This document shows, one piece after another, positions 25,789-37,543 of a stretch of 64,000 bases of DNA. Position numbers and translations under genes: made by a program. The stretch lies in the IMG/VR virus record IMGVR_UViG_3300042308_001616, positions 62,001 through 126,000 of that record. One strand, 5' to 3'. The notes below the pieces were generated by a model. That model searched no databases. It was not told the origin of the DNA and worked only from the letters and a program-made list of their open reading frames with translations. How positions within the stretch are numbered: position 1 is the stretch's first letter; the number at the start of each line of letters is the position of its first letter.

Positions 25789-26073
25789 TTACAAAATTTT
25801 GTCGATACCCATGTTCCGACGGACTCGTTTGGTTATGTCGCCTATGAACTCCCACGAAACGTGATCAGGAAGTCTACTAGAACTTTCGTACCAATCGTCG
25901 AATATATCCAGGCACTCTTCAACCATCTTTGTATAAGGAACTCCTATGTCCTCATAGTTACACGTGAGAACCTTCTCATCGCTTCTCGTATCGTGGATTC
26001 CAAACCAGTCCATCCACTGAATCTGTACCTCGAAACCTATTTTGTGTAACTCATTAAACCGTTCCTCGAACAT
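25789..26073 (-). CDS. Hypothetical protein
   Basis: 94-aa ORF directly after the methylase. Confidence 0.65.
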   Translation of the reverse strand: MFEERFNELHKIGFEVQIQWMDWFGIHDTRSDEKVLTCNYEDIGVPYTKMVEECLDIFDDWYESSSRLPDHVSWEFIGDITKRVRRNMGIDKIL

Positions 26074-26075
26074 AA

Positions 26076-27008
26076 CTAAACTCTTTTTCCAGTTTCTGGA
26101 TCGTAGTTCATAATAAGAAGTTCAATACCCTTCTCCTTCTCTACACCCTCTGTCTTAATAACTGCCGATGGTCTGTGAAACTCCTTCGATGTCCAGATGT
26201 ATTTATCTTTCGGTAGAATTTCTTCAAGTAACGGGAAGTAGTAATAAGATAAAGACCATCTCGATTTAGTTGTCTTCAATAGTTCTAATAACCTTCTATG
26301 TGAAGCAACTCCAAACGTGTTCTCGTCATCACATCCGTACCAAAACAAACGTCTACCATCATCATCATTCTTAACGTCATTGAATCGAGCGTAAGGCGGA
26401 TCCAGGTAAATATAAGTGTCTTCTGAATCGTATTTACGAATAACCTCCTCAAAGTCCATATTATGGAAGTCAGTTATATTCTTCAAACGCTCAGTGTATT
26501 TATTCTTCTCTAATTTGTTAATCAAAATACTAAGGTTCAGTTTATCCTTCTTCTTTTTATAACCAGTGAATCCACCACCACGAGGATACACACTAGAAAA
26601 TGATGATGTGATTAAGAACGCATACATAGCCGCTTTATCTAAATCACCAATCTCGAAGTCCATATCGTCTAAGAAGTCGTTTTGAACGTATTCCCTATAA
26701 ATTGCCTTATAGAAGTCCCATTTGTCGTCCACAGACGTCGCAGTGCAGTGTAACTTACCACCCGGTGCCATCAATGCTTTCAATACTGGAAGGAAGTTTT
26801 CTGGATCGGAACAACACTTCATCAGATTGGCCTGATGTCTGTTACGATCATTGAAAACAACAGTGTTGAACTCCATCTTAGAGTCTAAATAAATTGCAAA
26901 AGAACCAGAGAATGGCTCAATATACGTGGTACACTCCTCGAACGGTATGTTCGGAGTTATAAAGGATTGGAAGGCGGCCTTTCCGCCAAAATAAGAGACT
27001 ATCGACAT
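26076..27008 (-). CDS. dam: D12-class N6-adenine DNA methyltransferase (Dam-like)
   Basis: SYFGGK, YIEPFSGS, VFND, YLDPPY motifs; target sequence not determinable. Confidence 0.9.
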   Translation of the reverse strand: MSIVSYFGGKAAFQSFITPNIPFEECTTYIEPFSGSFAIYLDSKMEFNTVVFNDRNRHQANLMKCCSDPENFLPVLKALMAPGGKLHCTATSVDDKWDFYKAIYREYVQNDFLDDMDFEIGDLDKAAMYAFLITSSFSSVYPRGGGFTGYKKKKDKLNLSILINKLEKNKYTERLKNITDFHNMDFEEVIRKYDSEDTYIYLDPPYARFNDVKNDDDGRRLFWYGCDDENTFGVASHRRLLELLKTTKSRWSLSYYYFPLLEEILPKDKYIWTSKEFHRPSAVIKTEGVEKEKGIELLIMNYDPETGKRV

Positions 27009-27103
27009 TTTTGCTTGATTTTATTAGGTTTTTTTTACTTTTTTCTATATCTGATCTTTGTCTTACTTATACTTATTGTGATGTCAAAAGTTTCCGTTTT
27101 CGA

Positions 27104-27589
27104 TTAAATACCTAATATTGCATCAAGACCAACTCTGTGAACACCACGTAGTTCATCTCTTACTTTCATAAGTATTTTACCAAGATGGTTCTGTCCTCTA
27201 CCATTACAGACGCCCCAGAAGGTGTCGTTCCAGGTATTGCCTTCGACCAATTCTTCGTCACCGGTTTCGACCAACATCTCTGCTAAAATTTCAATTTTGA
27301 ATTTCTCTCGTATTGCCCAGTTCATAAAATCGAGTTTCTTCTCGTTCCAGTCTTTTCTTATAGACATCTTCTGACCGATTTTCTTTACCATTCCGGGATA
27401 TGCAATTCGTGCAATCATCTCGCGAAAATCTACGGGTGTATATTGATTTCCGTTAATTAATTGTGGACCATTACATTTCATCGCTACATAATAGTGTTCA
27501 ACGGATGGATAAACTATACCCTGGTGTTCTATCTCACAGGGGTAGAAGTTTGACAGGAAACCGTACCTACCTTCGAATTTTTGTATCAT
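27104..27589 (-). CDS. NADAR (YbiA-like) hydrolase
   Basis: FLSNFYP, SVEHYYVAMK, LVEGNTWNDTFWG, GQNHLGKILMKVRDEL; start moved to MIQKF. Confidence 0.9.
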   Translation of the reverse strand: MIQKFEGRYGFLSNFYPCEIEHQGIVYPSVEHYYVAMKCNGPQLINGNQYTPVDFREMIARIAYPGMVKKIGQKMSIRKDWNEKKLDFMNWAIREKFKIEILAEMLVETGDEELVEGNTWNDTFWGVCNGRGQNHLGKILMKVRDELRGVHRVGLDAILGI

Positions 27590-27594
27590 AATAT

Positions 27595-27882
27595 TTACCA
27601 ATATAACCAAGCAGCGTCTTTATAATTATCGTCAAACTCAGCATTATAACCTTTTAGTATTTTATGAAGTGTTTGTTTTTGTTTTGCACGTCTTACACGG
27701 TTTAACATCTTTCTGAAATATTTAGGTGCAGAGTTGTAGTAGGCGTTCCACTCATAAAAGTTATTATCAAGATATGAAGATACCCAAGCATCTCTGGATT
27801 CAGATACGTCACGACCAAGAAACTCCATACGGAGTGCCCTGAACAACTTCTCTCTTTCCCAGTGTTTGTTACCGTGCTTCAT
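27595..27882 (-). CDS. Hypothetical basic protein
   Basis: 95-aa ORF after a TATCTTCG box. Confidence 0.65.
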   Translation of the reverse strand: MKHGNKHWEREKLFRALRMEFLGRDVSESRDAWVSSYLDNNFYEWNAYYNSAPKYFRKMLNRVRRAKQKQTLHKILKGYNAEFDDNYKDAAWLYW

Positions 27883-27887
27883 AATGG

Positions 27888-27895
27888 CGAAGATA
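27888..27895 (-). promoter_or_regulatory. Bacteroidota-type -7 promoter box (TATCTTCG)
   Basis: Matches TAnnTTTG with one mismatch, a few bases upstream of ATG 27882. Confidence 0.5.
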
Positions 27896-27907
27896 CGAAT
27901 TAAATGT

Positions 27908-27938
27908 GAAAGCCCTCTTATGAGGGCTTTCTTTTTTT
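27908..27938 (-). terminator. Terminator downstream of tmRNA
   Basis: AAAGCCCTC-ttat-GAGGGCTTT immediately past the tmRNA 3' end. Confidence 0.75.
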
Positions 27939-27939
27939 G

Positions 27940-28307
27940 TGGAGATGATCGGGAACTGACCCCGATGTACTAATCAGACACCAATAGGTGCTCTTTCACA
28001 GGCTTAGTGAATTTTTCTAAACTCACAAAATAGTTAGTTGAATTAACCCGTCACTCTAACAATACTGGTTCCGCATTTGGACTGCACGGTACAGTTTGGA
28101 GAATTTTTTTTCGTCGGTATATTTCTACGCCAACTCGAGCTCGTTAGAGCCGATTTTTCTTAGGGCCGCTACTAAATCTTCACGGTTTCCTACTTCATTT
28201 GTTTTGCCATTTACGACAGTTTATCGCCTAATTTATAAATCGGACATTCGACAACCCGATACCTGCACAACTACCTGTAATCCGCTAGGCGAATCCATGA
28301 CATCCCC
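27940..28307 (-). ncRNA. ssrA: tmRNA (transfer-messenger RNA), 368 nt
   Basis: 5' GGGGATG pairs with 3' CATCTCC-A, giving the G3:U alanine determinant; GGATTCG D-loop-like segment; T-stem TCGGG/CCCGA; TAAAT-GGC resume site; tag frame 28208-28128 ending in TAG; CCA not encoded. Confidence 0.9.
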
Positions 28308-28386
28308 TTGTTGTGTTTGTTATATATTATATTCAAAGAACATAAAAAAGTTGATTCGGACAGTACAAACTGCCCGAATCAATTTG

Positions 28387-29331
28387 TTATTTTACATTTA
28401 CCAATGTGTTGCTGCCGTTACCAAGCACGGTCTCAGAGTTGTGACCATCCCATTTCTCAATCTTTTTGTATTCTACAAACAATGGAGTAAGTTTTTGTTG
28501 TGTAAGTTCCATCGCCTTAGCTTTTGCAGATGCGTTGATTACCGTTTCTGCGGAGTCGGCTCTTGCAACAGCAACTTTTCTCTCACCATCTGCGACTGCA
28601 GCGATTGCTTGTTGTTTAGAAGCCTCTGCTTGTTGCACAGATTTAGTTTTAGCGATGATTGCTTCTTGAAGTGCCTCTGGTGGAATGATGTTTGATCTCA
28701 TCTGTGATACTATGAACCACTTAGATAATCTTAAGTTACATTCTGCAACAATTGCAATTTCAAATGCTTGACGGTGTCCGAAGATTGAATCAACCTCCCA
28801 GGTATTAGCAACGTCATTTACTGCACCAACAATCGCGTTCTTTAGCCAACCTTGCTCTACTTCTTTGATAGGCAAACGTAGGTTCACAAACATATCTCCA
28901 ACTGCGGTAGGTTTCAAAGAGTAGTTGAACGAAGGTTTGATGTCGGCCGGGAAACCACCTTTGGTAATTACTTGTTGTTGGTCGAACTCTATGTGCTGCT
29001 GGAACGTAGGAAACTCATATAAGTTCTCTGTCCAGGTGTTGTAAACAACCCAACCTGTTTTGTACTGATACTTAGAAACACCTCTATTGTCCCCAGTAAG
29101 GTTCACTTTAATTCCGACGTGACCCGCATCTACTCTTTCGATAGCGAACGGCTGGATGAATGCGAAGATAAGTAACCCGACACCGGCAACGATACCGATT
29201 GTGACCGACTTCCGACCCTCGGCCTTCTGTGTAGTGTTGTTGTAACCTGCATCTTGTATCGTCCTGATACCTGTGATGATTTTGTAGGCAGCGAAACCTA
29301 AGGCCACTAGTGCCAAAATTGTAGTTATCAT
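28387..29331 (-). CDS. SPFH / band-7 / prohibitin-family membrane protein
   Basis: Two N-terminal TM segments, RVDAGHVGIKVNL, and an AIIAKTKSVQQAE coiled coil. Confidence 0.9.
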   Translation of the reverse strand: MITTILALVALGFAAYKIITGIRTIQDAGYNNTTQKAEGRKSVTIGIVAGVGLLIFAFIQPFAIERVDAGHVGIKVNLTGDNRGVSKYQYKTGWVVYNTWTENLYEFPTFQQHIEFDQQQVITKGGFPADIKPSFNYSLKPTAVGDMFVNLRLPIKEVEQGWLKNAIVGAVNDVANTWEVDSIFGHRQAFEIAIVAECNLRLSKWFIVSQMRSNIIPPEALQEAIIAKTKSVQQAEASKQQAIAAVADGERKVAVARADSAETVINASAKAKAMELTQQKLTPLFVEYKKIEKWDGHNSETVLGNGSNTLVNVK

Positions 29332-29526
29332 TTATTTGTTTTTATTGGTTATACGAGTGTAAATATAGTAAATAAAACCGAATGTATATAAAAATATGAA
29401 AATAATTATTACATTTTGTAAAATTGAGTTTACAGGACGACTTATGAAAGTGTCAAGTAGATAACCGGTTAGAGATAACCACAAAAAAATTCCTAATAAA
29501 GGAGTAAGTATTCTAAATAATTTCAT
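29332..29526 (-). CDS. Small two-TM membrane protein
   Basis: 64 aa with two hydrophobic segments, abutting the SPFH gene. Confidence 0.65.
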   Translation of the reverse strand: MKLFRILTPLLGIFLWLSLTGYLLDTFISRPVNSILQNVIIIFIFLYTFGFIYYIYTRITNKNK

Positions 29527-29547
29527 TTGGGTGTTTTTAGAAAAAAA

Positions 29548-29787
29548 CTAATTCGTTGTTTCAAACTCGAAGACAAAATCTCTTCCTTCGGACCACCAAA
29601 TACAGTCACCTACGTTGGCAATTGCCTCAAAGAAATTTATTAGGTCGTCTATTAAAATATTACCTGGTGTGAAGAAAAGTCTTTCTACTTTTCCTACTTT
29701 GTCTATTCTACACTCAAACTCTGCGGCAATTGACTCGAGTGTTTGATTTTCATTACTTTCATAGAACGTTTTGTATTTCTTTATCAT
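29548..29787 (-). CDS. Small protein with CTS-like N-terminus
   Basis: Begins MIKKYKTFYES. Confidence 0.7.
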   Translation of the reverse strand: MIKKYKTFYESNENQTLESIAAEFECRIDKVGKVERLFFTPGNILIDDLINFFEAIANVGDCIWWSEGRDFVFEFETTN

Positions 29788-30800
29788 AATCCAACAATAA
29801 TATATCCGTTTTCAACATTAACCGTGTCGATGTCGGTGAGTATATCTTTAAGTTTGTTGATTTCCCTTATTGTATCAGGAATAGGCCATCCCTCCACATC
29901 AAAATATACATCGAAAGTATTATTCAACTGGTAGCCTGCATAAGAACGTAATCTCTTCATTCGGTCGAGTACTTTTTTATGTTTTGCGGCCACTACTTCT
30001 TCTACATCTTCATCTTTAGATATAATTCGTGATGTAGGTAAAGACTCCCAATCAACATTTGTACTAGCACGGCAAAGTCTATCGAGATAAGATATGTTTT
30101 GTCTTTCCTTTCCTGTGTGTTCGTCGAAATAACCTACAGATACATTAGTACATTCTGGTATATCATTCATAAGCATTGCAGAGTCAGTAAATATACCTGT
30201 GGAATCTGGAGACATTTTAAGTCCGTTTTTACCGAACTCCGCACAAAGTGTCTTCGCAAATTCACTACTACAACAATTTCTACCTAATTGGTGTGTTATA
30301 ATTGAGTGGTAATTTCTACGGTCAAAAGAAACACATCTTTTTATTCCTATAAGTTGTTCTTCGTTTGCGAAATCCATCGCAAGTGCTTTGGAACCAATTC
30401 CACCTCTTTCTTCACCGATAAAGAAGTAATATAATCCAGGAACATTGTTGGCCATCATATAAAGCATAACGGTAACACCTGCTTTATCGTCTGCGCCTAA
30501 TATTGTCTTTCCATCGGTACATATAAACTCATCTTCACCCTCTGTATAAGTAAACCTAACGGTATCATTCTGTCTGTGATCAACGGTATCGAGGTGTGAT
30601 GTAAACATAGTTGATGATCCACCACCTACTACTTTATAATAGTTGCCGTGAGCATCTTGGTCTAATTCTGGTAGATATTTAAGTACCTCTTCTTCGTTTC
30701 CGTGTGGGTATGTTTTTGATGTGAGTGAAAGAAATGTGTTTTTTGGGTCTTTCGGGTCCATCTTACCCTCTTTGAAGTCTATTTTTTTCTTATCCATCAT
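29784..30800 (-). CDS. M28/M20-like zinc peptidase
   Basis: TSHLDTV, LGADDKAGV, GEERGGIGS, SFDRR, NVSVGYFDEH metal ligands. Confidence 0.85.
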   Translation of the reverse strand: MMDKKKIDFKEGKMDPKDPKNTFLSLTSKTYPHGNEEEVLKYLPELDQDAHGNYYKVVGGGSSTMFTSHLDTVDHRQNDTVRFTYTEGEDEFICTDGKTILGADDKAGVTVMLYMMANNVPGLYYFFIGEERGGIGSKALAMDFANEEQLIGIKRCVSFDRRNYHSIITHQLGRNCCSSEFAKTLCAEFGKNGLKMSPDSTGIFTDSAMLMNDIPECTNVSVGYFDEHTGKERQNISYLDRLCRASTNVDWESLPTSRIISKDEDVEEVVAAKHKKVLDRMKRLRSYAGYQLNNTFDVYFDVEGWPIPDTIREINKLKDILTDIDTVNVENGYIIVGL

Positions 30801-31351: not shown

Positions 31352-33481
31352 TTATATTAACTTTTCAAATTTAATCTTTCCACAATCATAAACTCTAAAA
31401 AGTTTATTTATTTGTGCATATTCTGACTCTGTCAAATATGTTTTCGTTTTAGATTTTTTATATCTGGATTTATGAACCCTATTACCATCAACTATATACT
31501 TATAGTCTGGTAGACTTTCACTCACCTTTTCAAATCCTAATTGATAATAAAGATTACCAACAGACCAATCACGATCCGCATAACTGATAACCCTTTTAGG
31601 TTTAAAGTTTCTAATAAAATAACTAAATAGTTTTGATGCACCACCAATTACCGTAGTATTTATAGAATTACAAAATCTATTGATGTTCCAATCAGATTCT
31701 GACATTTTTTTACGACCTTCGAAATGATCAAATGTCATCAAGCTAACTAATTGATTATTAAAAATCAAACCTAATTTCAAACAACTATTAACCTTACCCT
31801 GAATATGATTTTTTTCTAAAAAAGTCATAGCTGTTTTTGCATCAACTTCTATTATAGAACATTTTCTAGCATAAATAGTATTACTAATTTTATTCAACAT
31901 ATTTGAAATTTGTGACTCAATTATACTCCTTCTCATAACCCAATCATCCTCCCAAATATGAATAATACGTATATCTTTATTCCTAAAAAAATTAGTTTTA
32001 TTTATGTGGTAATTTTTATTCTTATATTCACTACTGTGCCAATAAAGACCATTAAACTCAAATCCAATACCCAGATCAGGAAGATAAATATCTATCTCTA
32101 AATCATCTCTATAACCAGATATTACCTCACCATCATATATCCCAGTTATATAATTAAGTAATTCTTTTTCCATTATAGACTTATTATCCCCAATAGGATA
32201 ACAAATGGTACAAATAGGATTGCCTGAATTGGTTCTTTTTATATAATTGTCAACACCTATTATAAATTTATGGTCTTTACCACAGTCACATATAAATAAA
32301 CTATTCGAGTCAGAAATGTATTGAATATAATTTAAGTCATTTGCAACAATATATTTATTCTTTCTAAATTCTTCAGATTTTTGAATATTATCAATTCCAA
32401 ATTGATTAATATTTGTCAATTTTGTTTTTTCTTTAGACTCATTTGTTTTAGAATAATTATCAACACCATACTTTTCCAGACTCGTATTAACAACTTTATA
32501 TTTAAACAAAGATGACTTAGAATGGTGTTCTACACCATATCTTTCTAAATTGGTATCTTTAGACTTCTTCTTAAAACTATCACTCTGATAATACCAATCA
32601 ACACCATATTTTAGTTTATTAGTTATTTTAGTACGATTATTATACTCATCAGTCTGTGCATAATATTTTACACCATATCTCTCTAAATTAGTCTTTGATG
32701 ATTTATTTCTGAAGTCATCACTCTGATAATAGAATTCTGAACCATATTTTTCTTTATTTGTTTTAGTAACACGATTAAGAAATTCATCCGTCTTTGAATA
32801 ATGATTTACACCATATTTCTCTAAATTAGTATTTAATGTCTTTTCTTTATACTCATCTGTTTGTGTATAATACTCTACACCATATTTCTCTAAATTTGTA
32901 TTTATAGTCTTTTCTTTATACTCATCCGTTTGTGTATAATGTTCTACACCATATTTTTCGAGATTTGTATTTACTCTTTTGTCCTTTACCGAATCTAATT
33001 GTGATATGTGAGAAACTCCATATTTACTATTTATATTGTCGGACCATTTTTTCCTTACCTCCTCATTTTGAAAACTAGACTTATGGCCATATCTTTCTAA
33101 ATTAGTATCCTCAATTTTTTTCTTTACTAAATCACTTTTTGCAACATTAGTAACTCCGTATTTCTCTAAATTTGTTTTAATCCTCTTCTCTTTGGTTGAT
33201 TTGTCAGATTGTGCACATTTAGGAGAACAATAATTTCTATAACCATCTAACCAGTTTTTATTGAATGTAGTAGGATTACCACAACAACATAAAAATTTAT
33301 TATCTATATCATTTACCCAATACCATAACTTTTCTTTAAAAGAAATATCTTCTATATTGGAACAAAAATCGTTTATTGTAGTAACAAGTTCTTCATAATT
33401 TTTCTCAAAAAAAGATTCACGTAATCTTGATGATGAACCATCAAGTATATCTAATATTATTTTTTTCCTTTCTTCTATCAT
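31352..33481 (-). CDS. Hef-like homing endonuclease: Zn module, twelve 23-aa repeats, PD-(D/E)XK domain, GNAT/Mom-like C-domain
   Basis: CCCG..YCSPKC; (TNLEKYGVExYxQTDEYKEK)-type repeats; EIDIYLP..GFEFNGLYWHS; RFC...SYADRDWSVGNLYYQLGF; visibly more AT-rich than flanks. Confidence 0.75.
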   Translation of the reverse strand: MIEERKKIILDILDGSSSRLRESFFEKNYEELVTTINDFCSNIEDISFKEKLWYWVNDIDNKFLCCCGNPTTFNKNWLDGYRNYCSPKCAQSDKSTKEKRIKTNLEKYGVTNVAKSDLVKKKIEDTNLERYGHKSSFQNEEVRKKWSDNINSKYGVSHISQLDSVKDKRVNTNLEKYGVEHYTQTDEYKEKTINTNLEKYGVEYYTQTDEYKEKTLNTNLEKYGVNHYSKTDEFLNRVTKTNKEKYGSEFYYQSDDFRNKSSKTNLERYGVKYYAQTDEYNNRTKITNKLKYGVDWYYQSDSFKKKSKDTNLERYGVEHHSKSSLFKYKVVNTSLEKYGVDNYSKTNESKEKTKLTNINQFGIDNIQKSEEFRKNKYIVANDLNYIQYISDSNSLFICDCGKDHKFIIGVDNYIKRTNSGNPICTICYPIGDNKSIMEKELLNYITGIYDGEVISGYRDDLEIDIYLPDLGIGFEFNGLYWHSSEYKNKNYHINKTNFFRNKDIRIIHIWEDDWVMRRSIIESQISNMLNKISNTIYARKCSIIEVDAKTAMTFLEKNHIQGKVNSCLKLGLIFNNQLVSLMTFDHFEGRKKMSESDWNINRFCNSINTTVIGGASKLFSYFIRNFKPKRVISYADRDWSVGNLYYQLGFEKVSESLPDYKYIVDGNRVHKSRYKKSKTKTYLTESEYAQINKLFRVYDCGKIKFEKLI

Positions 33482-33595
33482 AAAGTATATATAAAGTAAC
33501 ATTTACTCCTTTACTCTTATAAATATATATAATTTTTGTTTTTAGTATATCAATTTTTTGTTCAGAAAACCTGACAGTGTGAAAATTTTATTAAC

Positions 33596-35443: not shown

Positions 35444-37543
35444 TTAGATGTTTTTGAACCTTTCCATTATTGCAGACATTTCATCGTCAGACAACTTATC
35501 CTCTTGGATGAGTGCTTCGTGAGATACAAGCTTTTTAGTAGTGGATTCGTTCGTTTTGAGGTTTCTGGTTGACCAGAAATGCTCGATTTGAGACTCAGTC
35601 TTCAACATATCAGCTGGATAAAGTCTTGCTTGTGATAGCAAAGATTTTTTACCTGATTCGTTTAATTGACTCCAGATTGACTTAGTGTTTTCTGGCATAA
35701 GTCTTACTATTCTCTCTTCGAGTGTCTCAGTTGTAGTAGAAAGTGCCTCTGAAATGAGTGCAAGAACTTCTTTCTGTGTGAAATAACTTCTTTCGTTTAT
35801 GTGAAGTTTCACAGCTTCTTGCTCCTCGTTAGTGAGTGCGTAGAAACTATCTACTTGTGATTTGGACATAAACTTAAGAAAGTTCAAGTCACTTGTCTCG
35901 GAAACTTTACGTTTTTTAGCTTCTTCGATTAATTTATCAATAGATTCTGATAATTCAGAATCTGAATTTCCTGTAATATTTTCATATAAGTCATCGTGAG
36001 ATTCTTCCTCGTGAGATTCTTCCTCGTGTGCGTTTACTTCTTCAGGTGAAGTTTCAGCAACACCGTTAGGTCCACACTCTTCTTCTTCCACTTCTTCTTC
36101 TTCTTCTTCTTCTTTTTCGTTATCTAATGAAGCAAAGTGATCAGTAAGAACTGGGAAACCATCCTCTGCAGATTCGAAAACTTTTCCACCATTCAATTTC
36201 TCTGTAATTAAACCAGCGTAAGAAATAGTTTTGTCTAAGTTCTCAGCGATGTATTCAGAATAAGCGATGTTATCATCAAGGTGCTCAGCGATGTACTCAG
36301 AGTAAGCGATGTTACCTTCTACGTGCTCAGCTAAGTATTCAGAATAAGCGATTGAATTATCAACGTGCTCAGCGATGTACTCAGAATAAGCGATATTTTT
36401 ATCTAAGTTCTCAGCAATGTACTCAGAATAAGCGATATTTTTATCTAAATTCTCAGCAATGTACTCAGAGTAAGCGATATTTTTATCTAAGTTCTCAGCA
36501 AGGTACTCAGAATAAGAAATGTTTTTATCTAAATTCTCAGCGATATACTCAGAATAAGAAATGTTTTTATCTAAATTCTCAGCAACATACTCAGAATAAG
36601 CGATATTTTTGTCTAAGTTCTCAGCAAGGTACTCAGAATAGTTAACTGCCTTCTCAAGGTTCTCAGCTAAATAATCATTATGCTTGATAAGTTTTTCGGT
36701 AGTCTCTTTTAAAGACTTGTTCTCGTTTACCATAATCTGAACTTTTTCAGCTAAGTAGTCAAGATATTGGACAACTTTAGAGTTATCATTGTTGAGTTGC
36801 TCGTAATACTCAATAAGTTGCTCCAACTTCTTAGGGTCCATATTGCCTTTAGAGATGGCGTTTTTGACTTGCTTCTTAGTGGTAGCGAGCTCTTTGACCA
36901 AGTACTGCGAGTAGTCAGTCAACTGTTGTTTGGTAACGTACTCGTTCCTGTTCATGTTGAATAAATCATTTATTTTTGACTCATCGGACATCTCATATAT
37001 CCTAAAGTTAGATTTCGGGTTATCGAGGCCAAGAGATTCATTTAGAACTTTCACATTCATTTTGGCAGAGGCGAACCCCGGATCAGCCACAATGTCGTAT
37101 GTGAAAAGCTTCTTCAATGAGACCGTGCCATCAGATTCAGTGATACCTGCTGCGCGTGAAGAAACGAAAAGAGGACATCCGTCATCGACGAGTGCCTTAG
37201 CTTCTTTACCCCAATAGGTGCTCAATAGTCTGATTTCGCCCGATACCAGGTTAGATTCCTTAACATACTCAGCTTTAGTGATTATGTGGGAAGCCCTGGA
37301 AAGTGAGGTGTCGAAAACATCCGGGTGGTCGAACTCTCCATAGACTACACCGAGGTTATTCATTCTCTCGTTCATCTCTTGAAGTGCCGGAAGGAATCTG
37401 TTAGCAGTATAAACCCTCTCATTTCTGTTCTTAATATCGAACTCGGTGAAGGTTCCACCTAAAACATAATCCTTGTTACCAGACCCGTTGCTCTCTCTCA
37501 CAAGAGAGTTTGTAGAGTTTTCTACAATCAATACTGGTTTCAT
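35444..37543 (-). CDS. gp21: Prohead protease (gp21-like) fused to scaffold region
   Basis: KNRNERVY, YGEFDHP, ASHII, VSSRAAG, YDIVADPGF catalytic motifs followed by coiled-coil repeats and an acidic tract. Confidence 0.9.
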   Translation of the reverse strand: MKPVLIVENSTNSLVRESNGSGNKDYVLGGTFTEFDIKNRNERVYTANRFLPALQEMNERMNNLGVVYGEFDHPDVFDTSLSRASHIITKAEYVKESNLVSGEIRLLSTYWGKEAKALVDDGCPLFVSSRAAGITESDGTVSLKKLFTYDIVADPGFASAKMNVKVLNESLGLDNPKSNFRIYEMSDESKINDLFNMNRNEYVTKQQLTDYSQYLVKELATTKKQVKNAISKGNMDPKKLEQLIEYYEQLNNDNSKVVQYLDYLAEKVQIMVNENKSLKETTEKLIKHNDYLAENLEKAVNYSEYLAENLDKNIAYSEYVAENLDKNISYSEYIAENLDKNISYSEYLAENLDKNIAYSEYIAENLDKNIAYSEYIAENLDKNIAYSEYIAEHVDNSIAYSEYLAEHVEGNIAYSEYIAEHLDDNIAYSEYIAENLDKTISYAGLITEKLNGGKVFESAEDGFPVLTDHFASLDNEKEEEEEEEVEEEECGPNGVAETSPEEVNAHEEESHEEESHDDLYENITGNSDSELSESIDKLIEEAKKRKVSETSDLNFLKFMSKSQVDSFYALTNEEQEAVKLHINERSYFTQKEVLALISEALSTTTETLEERIVRLMPENTKSIWSQLNESGKKSLLSQARLYPADMLKTESQIEHFWSTRNLKTNESTTKKLVSHEALIQEDKLSDDEMSAIMERFKNI
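36225..36685 (-). repeat. About eleven 42-bp (14-aa) coding repeats, SEY[LIV]AE[NH][LV]DKNI[AS]Y
   Basis: Directly visible tandem repeats in DNA and protein. Confidence 0.95.

What the first reader, a model, noticed from the sequence alone, without database searches (positions are those of the whole stretch)
27940..28307. Phage tmRNA with an unusually long, atypical 27-residue tag and non-canonical tRNA-like domain
Seen: an intact acceptor stem with G3:U, a resume site TAAAT-GGC, and tag GKTNEVGNREDLVAALRKIGSNELELA-stop. The tag is much longer than the usual ~10 residues, contains a possible amphipathic helix (REDLVAALRKIG) and ends in ELELA rather than ALAA. The T-loop reads GTCAGTT rather than TTCRANT, CCA is not encoded, and a TAATATATA late-type motif lies upstream. 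Established: tag C-termini set ClpXP/Lon recognition, and acidic substitutions weaken it. Inference: it may rescue ribosomes while redirecting or sparing tagged proteins, or replace host tmRNA cut by defence nucleases.
Basis: partly seen in the sequence, partly recalled or inferred. Interest (0 to 1): 0.72.

Follow-up and report, generated by a model that had tools for sequence, protein, structure and literature searches.

The report
Divergent phage tmRNA, long conserved tag
A large freshwater phage carries its own, highly expressed ribosome-rescue RNA (tmRNA) from a previously unrecognised family that standard gene finders miss; it has an altered tRNA-like end and adds a 27-residue tag, about three times the usual length.

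Summary
Window 27937-28307 (minus strand) is a 371-nt tmRNA homologue. ARAGORN does not call it, and Rfam RF00023 scores 32.8 bits against a cut-off of 47, so comparative evidence carries the case. I collected 39 distinct homologues from phage contigs of up to 642 kb. Pairing is 91-100% canonical, with compensatory changes, in the acceptor stem (G3:U 39/39), helix 2, PK1, PK2, a PK4-like hairpin and the T arm. The tag frame is open in all 39 (27-29 codons). It starts four bases after an invariant A, as the E. coli A86 rule predicts. Single-base codon differences are 52% synonymous in this frame, against 18% and 2% in the other two. Three metatranscriptomes cover the gene at depths 30-100 times those of neighbouring genes. 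A conserved promoter-like motif and a terminator flank it. Compared with 34 Bacteroidota tmRNAs, three features are truly atypical: a 6-bp T stem, a GKCRGUN T loop instead of TTCRANT, and a long tag ending in Val or Ala rather than LAA/MAA. The missing CCA is ordinary. Six relatives encode SmpB; this genome, as assembled, does not. The most likely function is trans-translation using host AlaRS. What happens to tagged proteins is unknown. I rate it a new variant of a known kind.

The parts
28344..28352 (-). Upstream promoter-like box 1 (AACTTTTTT)
   Evidence: Conserved in all 39 family members at a similar distance upstream. The two-box motif occurs once in the window, against 0.01 expected by chance.
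28321..28331 (-). Upstream promoter-like box 2 (TATAATATATA), 13 nt before the mature 5' end
Evidence: TAT(T/A)ATATATA is conserved in the family upstream regions.
27937..28307 (-). tmRNA gene: 371 nt, G1 at 28307, ending ...CTCC-A-CAA at 27937
   Evidence: RF00023 full-length match at 32.8 bits, E = 3e-11. 39 distinct homologues. Structure counts. Metatranscriptome contigs at 28012-28304 with depth 1809 in X15, up to 108 in X17 and up to 92 in X19.
28301..28307 (-). Acceptor stem, 5' strand (GGGGAUG)
   Evidence: Pairs with 27941-27947. 100% canonical in 39 sequences. G3:U in 39/39. Pair 5 is AU/GC/GU/CG and pair 6 is UA/AU.
28289..28300 (-). D-loop analogue (UCAUGGAUUCGC)
   Evidence: G13 is invariant. 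G12 occurs only in the window's clade and co-occurs with U at T-loop position 2; 29 of the other 36 have A12 and all 36 have G at that T-loop position.
28261..28288 (-). Helix 2, 5' strand (RNA positions 20-47)
   Evidence: Pairs with 27970-28003. 97-100% canonical except pair 31/327. Many double changes.
28223..28260 (-). Pseudoknot 1 (S1 48-52/65-69; S2 56-59/82-85)
   Evidence: S1 is invariant. S2 is 91% canonical with 4/4 pairs covarying, and was found independently by an unbiased scan.
28209..28213 (-). Frame-setting upstream sequence UAAAU (U95, A96 = E. coli U85, A86)
   Evidence: A96-A98 are invariant and U95 is conserved in at least 90% of members. The resume codon begins 4 nt after A96, as in the E. 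coli A86 ruler rule (PMC2481249).
28128..28208 (-). Tag reading frame, 27 codons, GGC resume codon at 28208-28206: GKTNEVGNREDLVAALRKIGSNELELA
   Evidence: Open in 39/39 members (27-29 codons, 32 distinct tags) with no in-frame start codon. Entropy at codon positions 1/2/3 is 0.45/0.40/0.68. Synonymous:non-synonymous counts are 1102:1010 in this frame, against 311:1373 and 33:1595 in the other two.
28125..28127 (-). Tag stop codon UAG
   Evidence: Every tag frame in the family ends in TAA or TAG at the homologous place.
28162..28191 (-). Hairpin inside the tag frame (117-119/144-146 and 123-126/139-142; loop GAAGAUUUAGUA = E-D-L-V)
   Evidence: 94-97% canonical. The inner stem has 4/4 covarying pairs. 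The loop is nearly invariant at nucleotide level.
28071..28095 (-). Pseudoknot 2 (S1 213-216/224-227; S2 219-222/234-237)
   Evidence: S1 is 93% and S2 100% canonical, with 3/4 and 4/4 covarying pairs.
28033..28070 (-). Tentative pseudoknot 3 (S1 238-241/260-263; S2 248-252/271-275)
   Evidence: Seen by eye in the alignment. A per-sequence heuristic gives crossing stems in all members but in inconsistent registers. Inconclusive.
28007..28026 (-). PK4-like hairpin (282-286/297-301) with conserved loop UUUAGAAAAAU
   Evidence: 92% canonical, 5/5 pairs with double changes. Pairing of the loop with the upstream U run is possible but invariant, so it cannot be tested.
27970..28003 (-). Helix 2, 3' strand (RNA positions 305-338)
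   Evidence: See helix 2, 5' strand.
27948..27966 (-). T arm: 6-bp stem (342-347/355-360) and 7-nt loop GUCAGUU (27954-27960)
   Evidence: 97% canonical with 4 covarying pairs. The extra A342-U360 pair is invariant. The family loop consensus is G-K-C-R-G-U-N with C at position 3 in 39/39. All 34 Bacteroidota tmRNAs have a 5-bp stem and TTCRANT.
27941..27947 (-). Acceptor stem, 3' strand (CAUCUCC)
   Evidence: See acceptor stem, 5' strand.
27937..27940 (-). Discriminator A and CAA; CCA is not encoded
   Evidence: ACAA in 33 members and ACTA in 6. The same arrangement is seen in Bacteroidota tmRNA genes and in the phage's own tRNA genes.
27908..27931 (-). Terminator hairpin 5 nt after the gene (GAAAGCCCUC-AUAA-GAGGGCUUUC)
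   Evidence: -18.2 kcal/mol. Every family member has a strong hairpin followed by a U run within 0-8 nt of the 3' end.

Best explanation
This is a functional, phage-encoded one-piece tmRNA from a divergent family carried by large and huge phages of freshwater and related habitats. The hosts are probably Bacteroidota.

Shown:
- It is transcribed from its own promoter-like motif to its own terminator, and it accumulates as an abundant RNA.
- It folds into the tmRNA architecture: acceptor stem, D-loop analogue, long helix 2, PK1, tag frame, PK2, a PK4-like hairpin and a T arm.
- The tag frame has been kept open and has evolved under protein-level constraint.

Inferred:
- The precursor is trimmed and host CCA-adding enzyme supplies CCA. 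The phage encodes no such enzyme.
- Host AlaRS charges it with alanine through the invariant G3:U pair and the A discriminator. The phage encodes no AlaRS.
- SmpB binds the tRNA-like domain. SmpB is phage-encoded in six relatives. Here it is either the host's protein or a phage gene in the unassembled ~10% of the genome.
- The complex enters ribosomes stalled on broken mRNAs, which are expected to be plentiful during infection.
- Translation resumes at GGC, four bases after the invariant A96, so the nascent chain receives Ala plus the 27-residue tag and the ribosome is released at UAG.
- The tag, with its invariably hydrophobic last residue (Val or Ala), most likely acts as a recognition signal for a protease or adaptor. 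Its receptor probably differs from that of the host's short ...Y-A-(L/M)-A-A tag.
For: - RF00023 matches full length at these exact coordinates.
- 65 loci carry homologues, giving 39 distinct full-length sequences at 67-91% identity.
- Pair counts: acceptor stem 100% canonical with G3:U 39/39 and compensatory changes at pairs 5 and 6; helix 2 97-100% outside sub-helix H2c (82%, one poor pair); PK1 S2 91% with 4/4 covarying; PK2 93-100%; PK4-like hairpin 92% with 5/5 covarying; T arm 97%. Slid-partner controls are mostly 3-79%.
- An unbiased helix scan recovered PK1 S2, PK2 S2 and the tag hairpin.
- The tag frame is open in 39/39 with no start codon. Its coding signature is specific to that frame. 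Its position fits the E. coli A86+4 rule.
- Expression: metatranscriptome contigs over 28012-28304 have word depth 1809, up to 108 and up to 92, against roughly 0-26 on neighbouring genes.
- A conserved promoter-like motif and a terminator flank every member.
- Intact SmpB genes (162-181 bits) are present in six relatives, including the nearest one.
- Host link: resume context TAAAT|GGC AAn ACn and tag start G-(K/N)-T-N match Chitinophagaceae tmRNA (TAAAT|GGC AAT ACT, tag GNTQYAMAA), and the ACAA 3' end is identical to Niabella.
- Genomes over 634 kb in the huge-phage study were predicted to infect Bacteroidetes (PMC7162821).
Against: - The Rfam score is below the curated threshold and within the range tRNAs reach. 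ARAGORN does not call it.
- The T loop lacks the universal T54, Psi55 and A58 equivalents, and the T stem has an extra base pair. This could impair EF-Tu binding, ribosome accommodation or SmpB binding. Nothing here shows charging or tagging.
- No SmpB was found in this phage's 249-kb record by HMM or tblastn.
- The transcript contigs cover RNA positions ~4-296 only. The 3' tRNA-like part was not recovered at 90% identity or better, so no CCA-tailed mature end was seen. Contigs carry no strand information.
- The nearly invariant EDLV codons lie in a hairpin loop, so part of the apparent peptide conservation may be an RNA-level constraint.
Confidence: 0.78

Rival explanations
1. It is a working tmRNA, but its tag is not a degradation signal. 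Under this reading the long conserved peptide spares tagged proteins from the host ClpXP route, or directs them to another fate such as sequestration, membrane delivery, or binding to a phage factor.
For: - The tag lacks the LAA/MAA ending found in 33 of 34 host-phylum tags.
- Acidic residues sit close to the C-terminus: ELELA, EDLATV, EEPATV.
- Protein-level constraint extends over the first 19 codons tested, not only the C-terminus. A simple C-terminal degron would not need that.
Against: - The last residue is always Val or Ala and the preceding ones are mostly small or hydrophobic. That is the general character of C-terminal degrons recognised by ClpX-, Tsp- and Lon-type proteases.
- The only other long tags with a known fate, in Mycoplasma, are degradation tags for Lon (PMC3985003).
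- The phage and four of five large relatives encode a bona fide ClpP.
Confidence: 0.2
2. It is a decoy that inhibits host trans-translation. Because the tRNA-like domain is altered, it would bind SmpB or ribosomes unproductively, as reported for the CDS-less tmRNA-like RNA of mycobacteriophage DS6A.
For: - A phage tmRNA-like RNA that inhibits endogenous tmRNA is on record (PMC11915505).
- The T loop and T stem are non-canonical.
- No SmpB was found in this genome.
Against: - A decoy needs no reading frame. Here the frame is open in 39/39, placed exactly by the A96+4 rule, and shows synonymous-site excess only in that frame.
- The alanine identity elements are strictly conserved.
- Relatives carry their own intact SmpB. 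That points to a working pair.
Confidence: 0.06
3. It is a decaying host-derived tmRNA copy, or a remnant of an attachment site from integration into ssrA, with no function of its own.
For: - Many mobile elements integrate into ssrA and carry part of it (PMC11915505 abstract).
- The Rfam score is sub-threshold.
Against: - It is full length, not a 3' fragment.
- It is conserved with compensatory changes across phages that differ by 10-30% in this gene.
- An nhmmer profile of the family finds no similarity to host tmRNAs.
- It has its own conserved promoter-like motif and terminator and is highly transcribed.
- No integrase lies next to it. The neighbours are SPFH, NADAR and Dam methylase genes.
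Confidence: 0.02
4. It is an ordinary small protein-coding gene, or an unrelated structured RNA that resembles tmRNA by chance.
For: - The frame shows protein-level constraint.
- ARAGORN does not call it, and its Rfam score is in the tRNA range.
Against: - There is no ATG, GTG or TTG in frame between the upstream stop and GGC.
- The 5' and 3' ends form a 7-bp acceptor stem with G3:U in 39/39, next to a T arm.
- The RF00023 match spans the whole model.
- PK1 and the UA(N3) resume context sit where tmRNA has them.
Confidence: 0.01

Closest known systems
Standard one-piece bacterial tmRNA (SsrA; Rfam RF00023), especially that of Bacteroidota (Chitinophagaceae)
   Same: - 7-bp acceptor stem with G3:U and an A discriminator.
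- Long helix 2, with PK1 just before the resume codon.
- U-A frame-setting dinucleotide 5 and 4 nt upstream of the resume codon.
- Start-less short frame ending in a stop codon, followed by further pseudoknots.
- Overall length of 371 nt.
- Gly (GGC) resume codon, G-N-T tag start and a non-encoded CCA (ACAA), all as in Chitinophagaceae.
   Different: - T stem of 6 bp instead of 5.
- T loop GKCRGUN instead of TTCRANT.
- In 29 of 39 members the D-loop GG is AG.
- Tag of 27-29 residues instead of 8-10, ending in Val or Ala instead of LAA/MAA.
- Rfam score of 32.8 bits, against at least 105 bits for 97 host-phylum tmRNAs.
- No sequence similarity to host tmRNAs detectable by nhmmer.
tmRNA and SmpB genes reported in huge phages (Al-Shayeb et al. 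2020, PMC7162821; Mar_Mega_1 preprint 10.1101/2021.07.26.453748)
   Same: These are phage-encoded trans-translation components in phages over 200 kb. The two nearest annotated-collection relatives are uncultured-phage records of 634,780 and 642,428 bp. All five large relatives tested encode SmpB.
   Different: That study called tmRNAs with ARAGORN only. ARAGORN finds nothing at this element in the window or in LR745206 and LR756502, and RF00023 finds only tRNA-sized fragments in those genomes. So this family was most probably not among the reported ones. That is an inference; I did not check their supplementary tables.
Extended tmRNA tag of Mycoplasma/Mesoplasma, recognised by Lon
   Same: The tag is far longer than the usual 10 residues, has a non-ALAA ending, and (in Mycoplasma) has co-evolved with a particular protease (PMC3985003, citing Gur and Sauer 2008 and Ge and Karzai 2009).
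   Different: - The lineage is unrelated, and I saw no sequence similarity between the tags.
- The Mycoplasma tag ends in AFA.
- Mycoplasma lacks ClpXP, whereas this phage encodes ClpP and no Lon.
- The receptor of the phage tag is unknown.
CDS-less tmRNA-like RNA of mycobacteriophage DS6A
   Same: It is a phage-encoded tmRNA relative with a non-standard design (PMC11915505).
   Different: DS6A's RNA has no tag frame and inhibits host tmRNA. The RNA here is full length, with a conserved tag frame that has evolved under protein-level constraint.

Membership tests
tmRNA (SsrA, RF00023) | 5' and 3' ends pair into a 7-bp acceptor stem with G3:U70 and a discriminator A (alanine identity) | tested here: met
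   100% canonical pairing. G3:U in 39/39. A at the discriminator in 39/39. Compensatory changes at pairs 5 and 6. PMC3985003 says the G-U third pair is completely conserved in tmRNAs.
tmRNA (SsrA, RF00023) | T arm with 5-bp stem and T-Psi-C loop consensus (TTCRANY) | tested here: not met
   A T arm is present and covaries, but the stem has 6 bp (invariant extra A-U pair) and the loop is G-K-C-R-G-U-N in the family. Only the C56 equivalent is kept, in 39/39. All 34 host-phylum tmRNAs have TTCRANT on 5 bp. This is a typical feature, not a function-defining one.
tmRNA (SsrA, RF00023) | D-loop analogue with GG that contacts the T loop and SmpB | tested here: inconclusive
   The window has UGGAUUCG, as canonical tmRNAs do. 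29 of the other 36 members have UAGAAU. G13 is invariant. Position 12 covaries with T-loop position 2: G with U in the window's clade, A with G in 29 of the other 36. That is a single evolutionary event.
tmRNA (SsrA, RF00023) | Long helix 2 joining the tRNA-like domain to the pseudoknot ring | tested here: met
   Positions 20-47 pair with 305-338. Pairing is 97-100% canonical except one position, with 11 pairs showing double changes.
tmRNA (SsrA, RF00023) | [quoted passage not shown] | tested here: met
   S1 is invariant. S2 is 91% canonical with 4/4 covarying pairs, and was also found by the unbiased scan.
tmRNA (SsrA, RF00023) | Start-less short reading frame, with its first codon 4 nt after a conserved A (E. 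coli A86), ending at a stop codon | tested here: met
   Invariant A96, with G100 of GGC four bases downstream. 27-29 codons are open in 39/39, ending in TAA or TAG. The coding signature appears only in this frame.
tmRNA (SsrA, RF00023) | Tag of about 10 residues ending in A-L/M/V-A-A | tested here: not met
   Tags are 27-29 residues. The last residue is Val in 22 and Ala in 17, and only 1 of 39 ends in AA. Host-phylum tags are 8-10 residues ending in LAA or MAA. A precedent for long, non-ALAA tags exists in Mycoplasma.
tmRNA (SsrA, RF00023) | Pseudoknots 2-4 after the tag frame | tested here: inconclusive
   PK2 is supported (93-100% canonical, 7 of 8 pairs covarying). A PK4-like hairpin is supported (92%, 5/5 covarying). 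PK3 and the second stem of PK4 are only tentative.
tmRNA (SsrA, RF00023) | Passes the curated detection thresholds (Rfam gathering score; ARAGORN) | tested here: not met
   32.8 bits against 47. ARAGORN finds none in the window, the whole genome or the relatives' loci.
tmRNA (SsrA, RF00023) | Accumulates as a stable, abundant small RNA | tested here: met
   Metatranscriptome contigs over the gene are 30-100 times deeper than those on neighbouring genes, in three independent runs. The strand and the exact ends were not resolved.
tmRNA (SsrA, RF00023) | SmpB partner available | tested here: inconclusive
   SmpB is absent from this 249-kb record, which is ~90% complete. It is present and intact in six relatives, including the nearest. 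Host SmpB is presumably available.
tmRNA (SsrA, RF00023) | Alanylation, EF-Tu delivery, peptide tagging and ribosome release | not testable with these tools
   These need biochemistry or proteomics.

The most novel reading that the evidence does not exclude
These phages run a semi-orthogonal trans-translation system. Its parts would be a tmRNA with a re-engineered elbow (a 13-bp acceptor/T stack, and a T loop with G at the positions of T54 and A58) that has co-evolved with a phage SmpB, plus a 28-30-residue appended peptide that is a specific recognition module for a partner of the phage's choosing, such as a protease complex containing the phage ClpP or an adaptor. On this reading the phage, not the host, decides the fate of proteins from stalled ribosomes during infection.
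Probability: 0.2. Interest if true: 0.8.

Novelty: new variant of a known kind. Interest (0 to 1): 0.62.

Why it matters
- **Annotation gap.** ARAGORN, the tool used in the huge-phage survey (PMC7162821), and Rfam at curated thresholds both miss a whole family of phage tmRNAs. The 2025 tmRNA database surveyed only RefSeq viruses. Counts of phage-encoded ribosome-rescue genes are therefore underestimates, and alignment A3 could seed a new model.
- **Natural experiment on the tRNA-like domain.** The family shows that G3:U, the discriminator A, the C56 equivalent and the A86 equivalent are kept, while T54, Psi55, A58 and the 5-bp T stem are not. That bears on what AlaRS, EF-Tu, SmpB and the ribosome really require.
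- **Tag function.** A 27-29-residue tag under protein-level selection, in phages that also carry ClpP and often SmpB, makes it directly testable whether phages reprogramme the fate of stalled-ribosome products. The peptide is also a ready-made search string for metaproteomes.

Tried and rejected
- **Standard detection.** ARAGORN on the window, the whole genome and all relatives' loci found no tmRNA. Rfam at gathering thresholds found none. RF00023 on five large relatives hit only tRNA-sized fragments.
- **Metagenome pattern scan.** The PK1 pattern returned 120 loci, but about 100 were a chance match inside an unrelated protein-coding gene in human-gut contigs. They are neither host tmRNAs nor gut megaphages. 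Only 11 were family members.
- **Host from SmpB.** The best cellular hits, at 40-52% identity, are spread over many phyla, so there is no signal.
- **Host from ClpP.** 45-60% identity across Bacteroidota is too conserved to discriminate. I did not run other phyla.
- **Idea that the window's clade lacks SmpB.** I had thought the clade with the canonical GG D-loop relies on host SmpB. The nearest relative, G014, encodes SmpB, so I rejected this. The G014 SmpB region has no counterpart in this genome, so neither loss nor incomplete assembly can be ruled out.
- **Promoter class.** The upstream motif occurs once in the window, so it is not a common promoter class here.
- **Similarity to host tmRNAs.** An nhmmer profile of the family against ten cellular tmRNAs found nothing significant.
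- **Second tag hairpin (H5).** A fixed-column second hairpin in the tag is only 51% paired. Clade-specific hairpins are visible by eye but I did not quantify them.
- **PK3.** The heuristic gives inconsistent registers.
- **Not done.** I did not build a full-length covariance model, because about 380 positions exceeds the calibration time limit. I counted pairs with my own script instead of the count of structure pairs, to avoid typing a 410-character structure string. I could not see a CCA-tailed 3' end, because the transcript contigs stop near RNA position 296.
Full report
**1. What is in the sequence**

- GGGGAUG at the 5' end pairs with CAUCUCC near the 3' end, with G3:U.
- A discriminator A is followed by CAA, not CCA.
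- The context GUAAAU|GGC opens a frame reading GKTNEVGNREDLVAALRKIGSNELELA, then UAG. No in-frame start codon lies upstream.
- There is a hairpin with the loop GUCAGUU where a T loop should be.
- TATAATATATA sits 13 nt upstream of the 5' end.

ARAGORN finds no tmRNA in the window or in the whole 248,751-bp virus record, although it finds 26 tRNAs there. Rfam at gathering thresholds finds nothing. A permissive scan gives a full-length RF00023 match at exactly these coordinates: 32.8 bits against a gathering score of 47, E = 3e-11 and 1.6e-12 in the genome. Only the two ends align with high posterior probability. Ordinary tRNAs score 31-43 bits on this model, so that score alone proves little.

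**2. A family**

The only similar DNA in the annotated phage collection is in two unannotated 'uncultured phage' records of 634,780 and 642,428 bp. Two pattern scans of viral contigs and one of metagenome contigs, filtered with blastn and an nhmmer profile, gave 65 loci with a homologue and 39 usable distinct full-length sequences (alignment A3). Identity to the window ranges from 67% to 91%. The contigs reach 385, 476 and 483 kb. DNA holders of the window sequence are lake, river and other freshwater metagenomes. About 100 human-gut hits from the metagenome scan were a chance match inside an unrelated protein-coding gene.

**3. Structure**

RNAalifold on 18 sequences, an unbiased scan of all column pairs and explicit pair counts on 39 sequences with slid-partner controls agree on a tmRNA architecture.

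| Element | RNA positions | Canonical pairing | Covariation |
|---|---|---|---|
| Acceptor stem | 1-7/361-367 | 100% | G3:U 39/39; pair 5 AU/GC/GU/CG; pair 6 UA/AU |
| Helix 2 | 20-47/305-338 | 97-100% except one position | 11 pairs with double changes |
| PK1 S1 | 48-52/65-69 | invariant | none possible |
| PK1 S2 | 56-59/82-85 | 91% | 4/4 |
| PK2 S1 | 213-216/224-227 | 93% | 3/4 |
| PK2 S2 | 219-222/234-237 | 100% | 4/4 |
| PK4-like hairpin | 282-286/297-301 | 92% | 5/5 |
| T arm | 342-347/355-360 | 97% | 4 pairs |

Slid controls are mostly 3-79%. A third pseudoknot between PK2 and the last hairpin is plausible but was not resolved.

**4. The reading frame**

Three independent lines point to the same frame:
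- In E. coli the resume codon lies four bases after the nearly universal A86, which acts as a ruler (PMC2481249). Here A96 is invariant, U95 is conserved in at least 90% of members, and GGC starts at position 100.
- The frame is open in 39/39 members for 27-29 codons and ends in TAA or TAG at the homologous place, giving 32 distinct peptides.
- Variation is protein-like only in this frame. Entropy at codon positions 1, 2 and 3 is 0.45, 0.40 and 0.68. Single-base codon differences are synonymous in 1102 of 2112 comparisons, against 311 of 1684 and 33 of 1628 in the other two frames. The comparisons are not phylogenetically independent, but the contrast between frames is large.

The family consensus is G-(K/N)-(T/V)-N-E-V-G-T-(R/S)-E-D-L-V-A-A-L-(Q/K)-N-N-..-(E/D)-(L/P)-x-x-(V/A).

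Part of this conservation is imposed by RNA. Codons 6-9 and 14-16 form a hairpin whose stem covaries (4/4 pairs), coupling the changes R/S/K at codon 9 with A/F at codon 14. The loop, GAAGAUUUAGUA (E-D-L-V), is almost invariant at nucleotide level.

**5. Expression and gene boundaries**

I laid Logan contigs of four metatranscriptomes on window 26000-30500. In three of them, contigs covering 28012-28304 have word depths of 1809 (X15), 44-108 (X17) and 17-92 (X19). The neighbouring methylase gene reads 16-26, 1-3.5 and 0-0.9, and most other flanks read zero. These contigs are 97-99% identical to the window. They stop near RNA position 296, where a strain variant diverges, so the 3' tRNA-like part and any added CCA were not seen. 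Contigs give no strand.

All 39 members share an upstream AACTTTTT box, then about 9-17 nt, then TAT(T/A)ATATATA, with the mature 5' end 7-25 nt further on. All have a strong hairpin followed by a U run within 0-8 nt of the 3' end. The two-box motif occurs once in the 64-kb window. The gene is therefore a self-contained, strongly transcribed unit.

**6. What is atypical and what is not**

As background I took tmRNAs from the presumed host phylum. 97 of 101 sampled genomes have one scoring at least 105 bits. In 34 sequences examined, the T loop is TTCRANT on a 5-bp stem in all 34, and tags are 8-10 residues ending in LAA or MAA in 33. The one exception, Dyadobacter, is an ARAGORN mis-call.

Against that background the phage family differs in three ways:
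- An invariant extra A-U pair makes a 6-bp T stem, and so a 13-bp acceptor/T stack.
- The T loop is G-K-C-R-G-U-N. GGCAGTA and GGCAGTG are the commonest forms, and the window has GTCAGTT. Only the C56 equivalent is retained.
- The tag is three times as long and ends in Val (22) or Ala (17).

29 of the 39 members also have AG instead of GG in the D-loop analogue. The window's small clade has GG together with U at T-loop position 2, the tRNA-like G18/Psi55 combination. All other members have G at that T-loop position, and 29 of those 36 have A12. That is a single covariation event consistent with a D-loop/T-loop contact.

The non-encoded CCA is ordinary. Bacteroidota tmRNA genes end in A-CAA, A-CGA or A-CTG, and Niabella has exactly ACAA. 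The phage's own 26 tRNA genes also lack CCA.

**7. Partners and host**

The phage encodes no AlaRS and no CCA-adding enzyme, so charging and maturation must use host enzymes.

SmpB is absent from this 249-kb record by HMM and by tblastn with the relatives' proteins. All five large relatives tested, and the nearest relative G014, encode an intact SmpB of 144-155 residues scoring 162-181 bits. The G014 SmpB region has no counterpart in this record, whereas the tmRNA flanks are syntenic at about 76% identity. CheckV rates the record 90% complete. Loss, or a location in the unassembled part, both remain possible.

The phage encodes a bona fide ClpP (227 residues, 220 bits) but no Lon and no ClpX-type ATPase. 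ClpP is present in one to three copies in four of the five large relatives. This is context only. No link between ClpP and the tag has been shown.

The host is probably a member of the Bacteroidota:
- The Gly resume codon, the context TAAAT|GGC AAn ACn and the tag start G-(K/N)-T-N match Chitinophagaceae tmRNA, whose tag is GNTQYAMAA.
- The huge-phage study predicted Bacteroidetes hosts for its genomes over 634 kb (PMC7162821). That the two 634-642-kb records come from that study is my inference.
- SmpB and ClpP similarity gave no usable host signal.

**8. Mechanism and alternatives**

The best reading is a working tmRNA. Host enzymes mature and alanylate it, a phage or host SmpB escorts it, and it releases ribosomes stalled on damaged or truncated mRNAs during infection. 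In doing so it appends Ala plus 27 residues.

Shown: homology, fold, conservation of identity elements, a selected frame and high expression. Inferred: charging, SmpB binding, tagging and the fate of tagged proteins.

- A decoy role, as for the CDS-less RNA of phage DS6A (PMC11915505), is unlikely because the frame is under protein-level selection.
- A pseudogene or attachment-site remnant is excluded by covariation, full length, its own transcription signals and expression.
- Whether the tag is a degron for a different protease, or instead spares or redirects proteins, is open. The invariably hydrophobic C-terminal residue and the Mycoplasma-Lon precedent (PMC3985003) favour a degron with a different receptor. 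Constraint along the whole peptide suggests a multipartite or adaptor-type recognition.
- Nothing supports or refutes the idea that it replaces host tmRNA cut by defence nucleases.

**9. Novelty**

Phage tmRNAs and phage SmpB are known (PMC7162821; 10.1101/2021.07.26.453748). This family was most likely overlooked, for two reasons. The huge-phage study used ARAGORN, which does not call it. The 2025 tmRNA database drew on RefSeq viruses only.

I rate it a new variant of a known kind: a tmRNA by descent and architecture, with a conserved non-canonical T arm and a long tag that has evolved under protein-level constraint.

Noticed in passing
L309:1360-2043 (G000 186098-186781, outside the window): The phage encodes a full-length, bacterial-type ClpP (227 aa, 220 bits, with a 47-residue N-terminal extension) next to a D-2-hydroxyacid dehydrogenase. 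No ClpX-type ATPase or Lon was found in the genome. ClpP is present in one to three copies in four of the five large relatives.
   Followed up: partly
G000 225835-231000 (outside the window): A cluster of 26 tRNA genes, none with an encoded CCA. Many are followed by CAA or CTA and an A-rich stretch, the same 3' context as the tmRNA gene.
   Followed up: partly
window 26076-27610 and 28387-30800, minus strand: The tmRNA's neighbours are a D12-class adenine methyltransferase (26076-27008), a NADAR-domain protein (27104-27610), an SPFH/Band 7 protein with an N-terminal membrane segment (28387-29331) and a weak M28-peptidase-like protein (29784-30800; 16 bits, below the cut-off). The 95-aa ORF just downstream (27595-27882) has no Pfam match, but its DNA is conserved in LR745206.
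   Followed up: partly
window 31352-33502, minus strand: A 716-aa ORF contains a run of more than a dozen copies of a ~20-residue motif (…TNLEKYGV.HY.QTDEYKEKT…) ahead of a C-terminal domain. I did not investigate it.
   Followed up: no
window about 36198-36677 (G000 98198-98677): blastn of the relative's locus L029 against the genome gives many offset hits here. This suggests an internal tandem repeat within a conserved gene.
   Followed up: no
window 27908-27931: The terminator hairpin after the tmRNA gene is followed by T7 on the plus strand, so it could terminate transcription in both directions. It produced several weak chance matches to leader and sRNA families in Rfam (PyrG leader, rnk leader).
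   Followed up: no
L297 (Dyadobacter tmRNA locus): ARAGORN reports a 29-residue tag from an internal site for this ordinary Bacteroidota tmRNA. Read directly, the sequence gives a normal G-E-N-T-Y-A-M-A-A tag, so long ARAGORN tags need checking.
   Followed up: partly
G002 (IMGVR_UViG_3300032236_002285, 476,236 bp; locus L025): IMG/VR classes this 476-kb relative as a 'provirus', although CheckV calls it 97% complete and it resembles the other free huge-phage genomes.
   Followed up: no
window RNA positions 205-210 (window 28098-28103), conserved AUUCUCC after the tag stop: A conserved UUCUCC stretch between the stop codon and PK2 is complementary to the 5' acceptor strand GGGGA (93% pairing in the scan). 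It could compete with acceptor-stem formation, or it could be coincidental.
   Followed up: no
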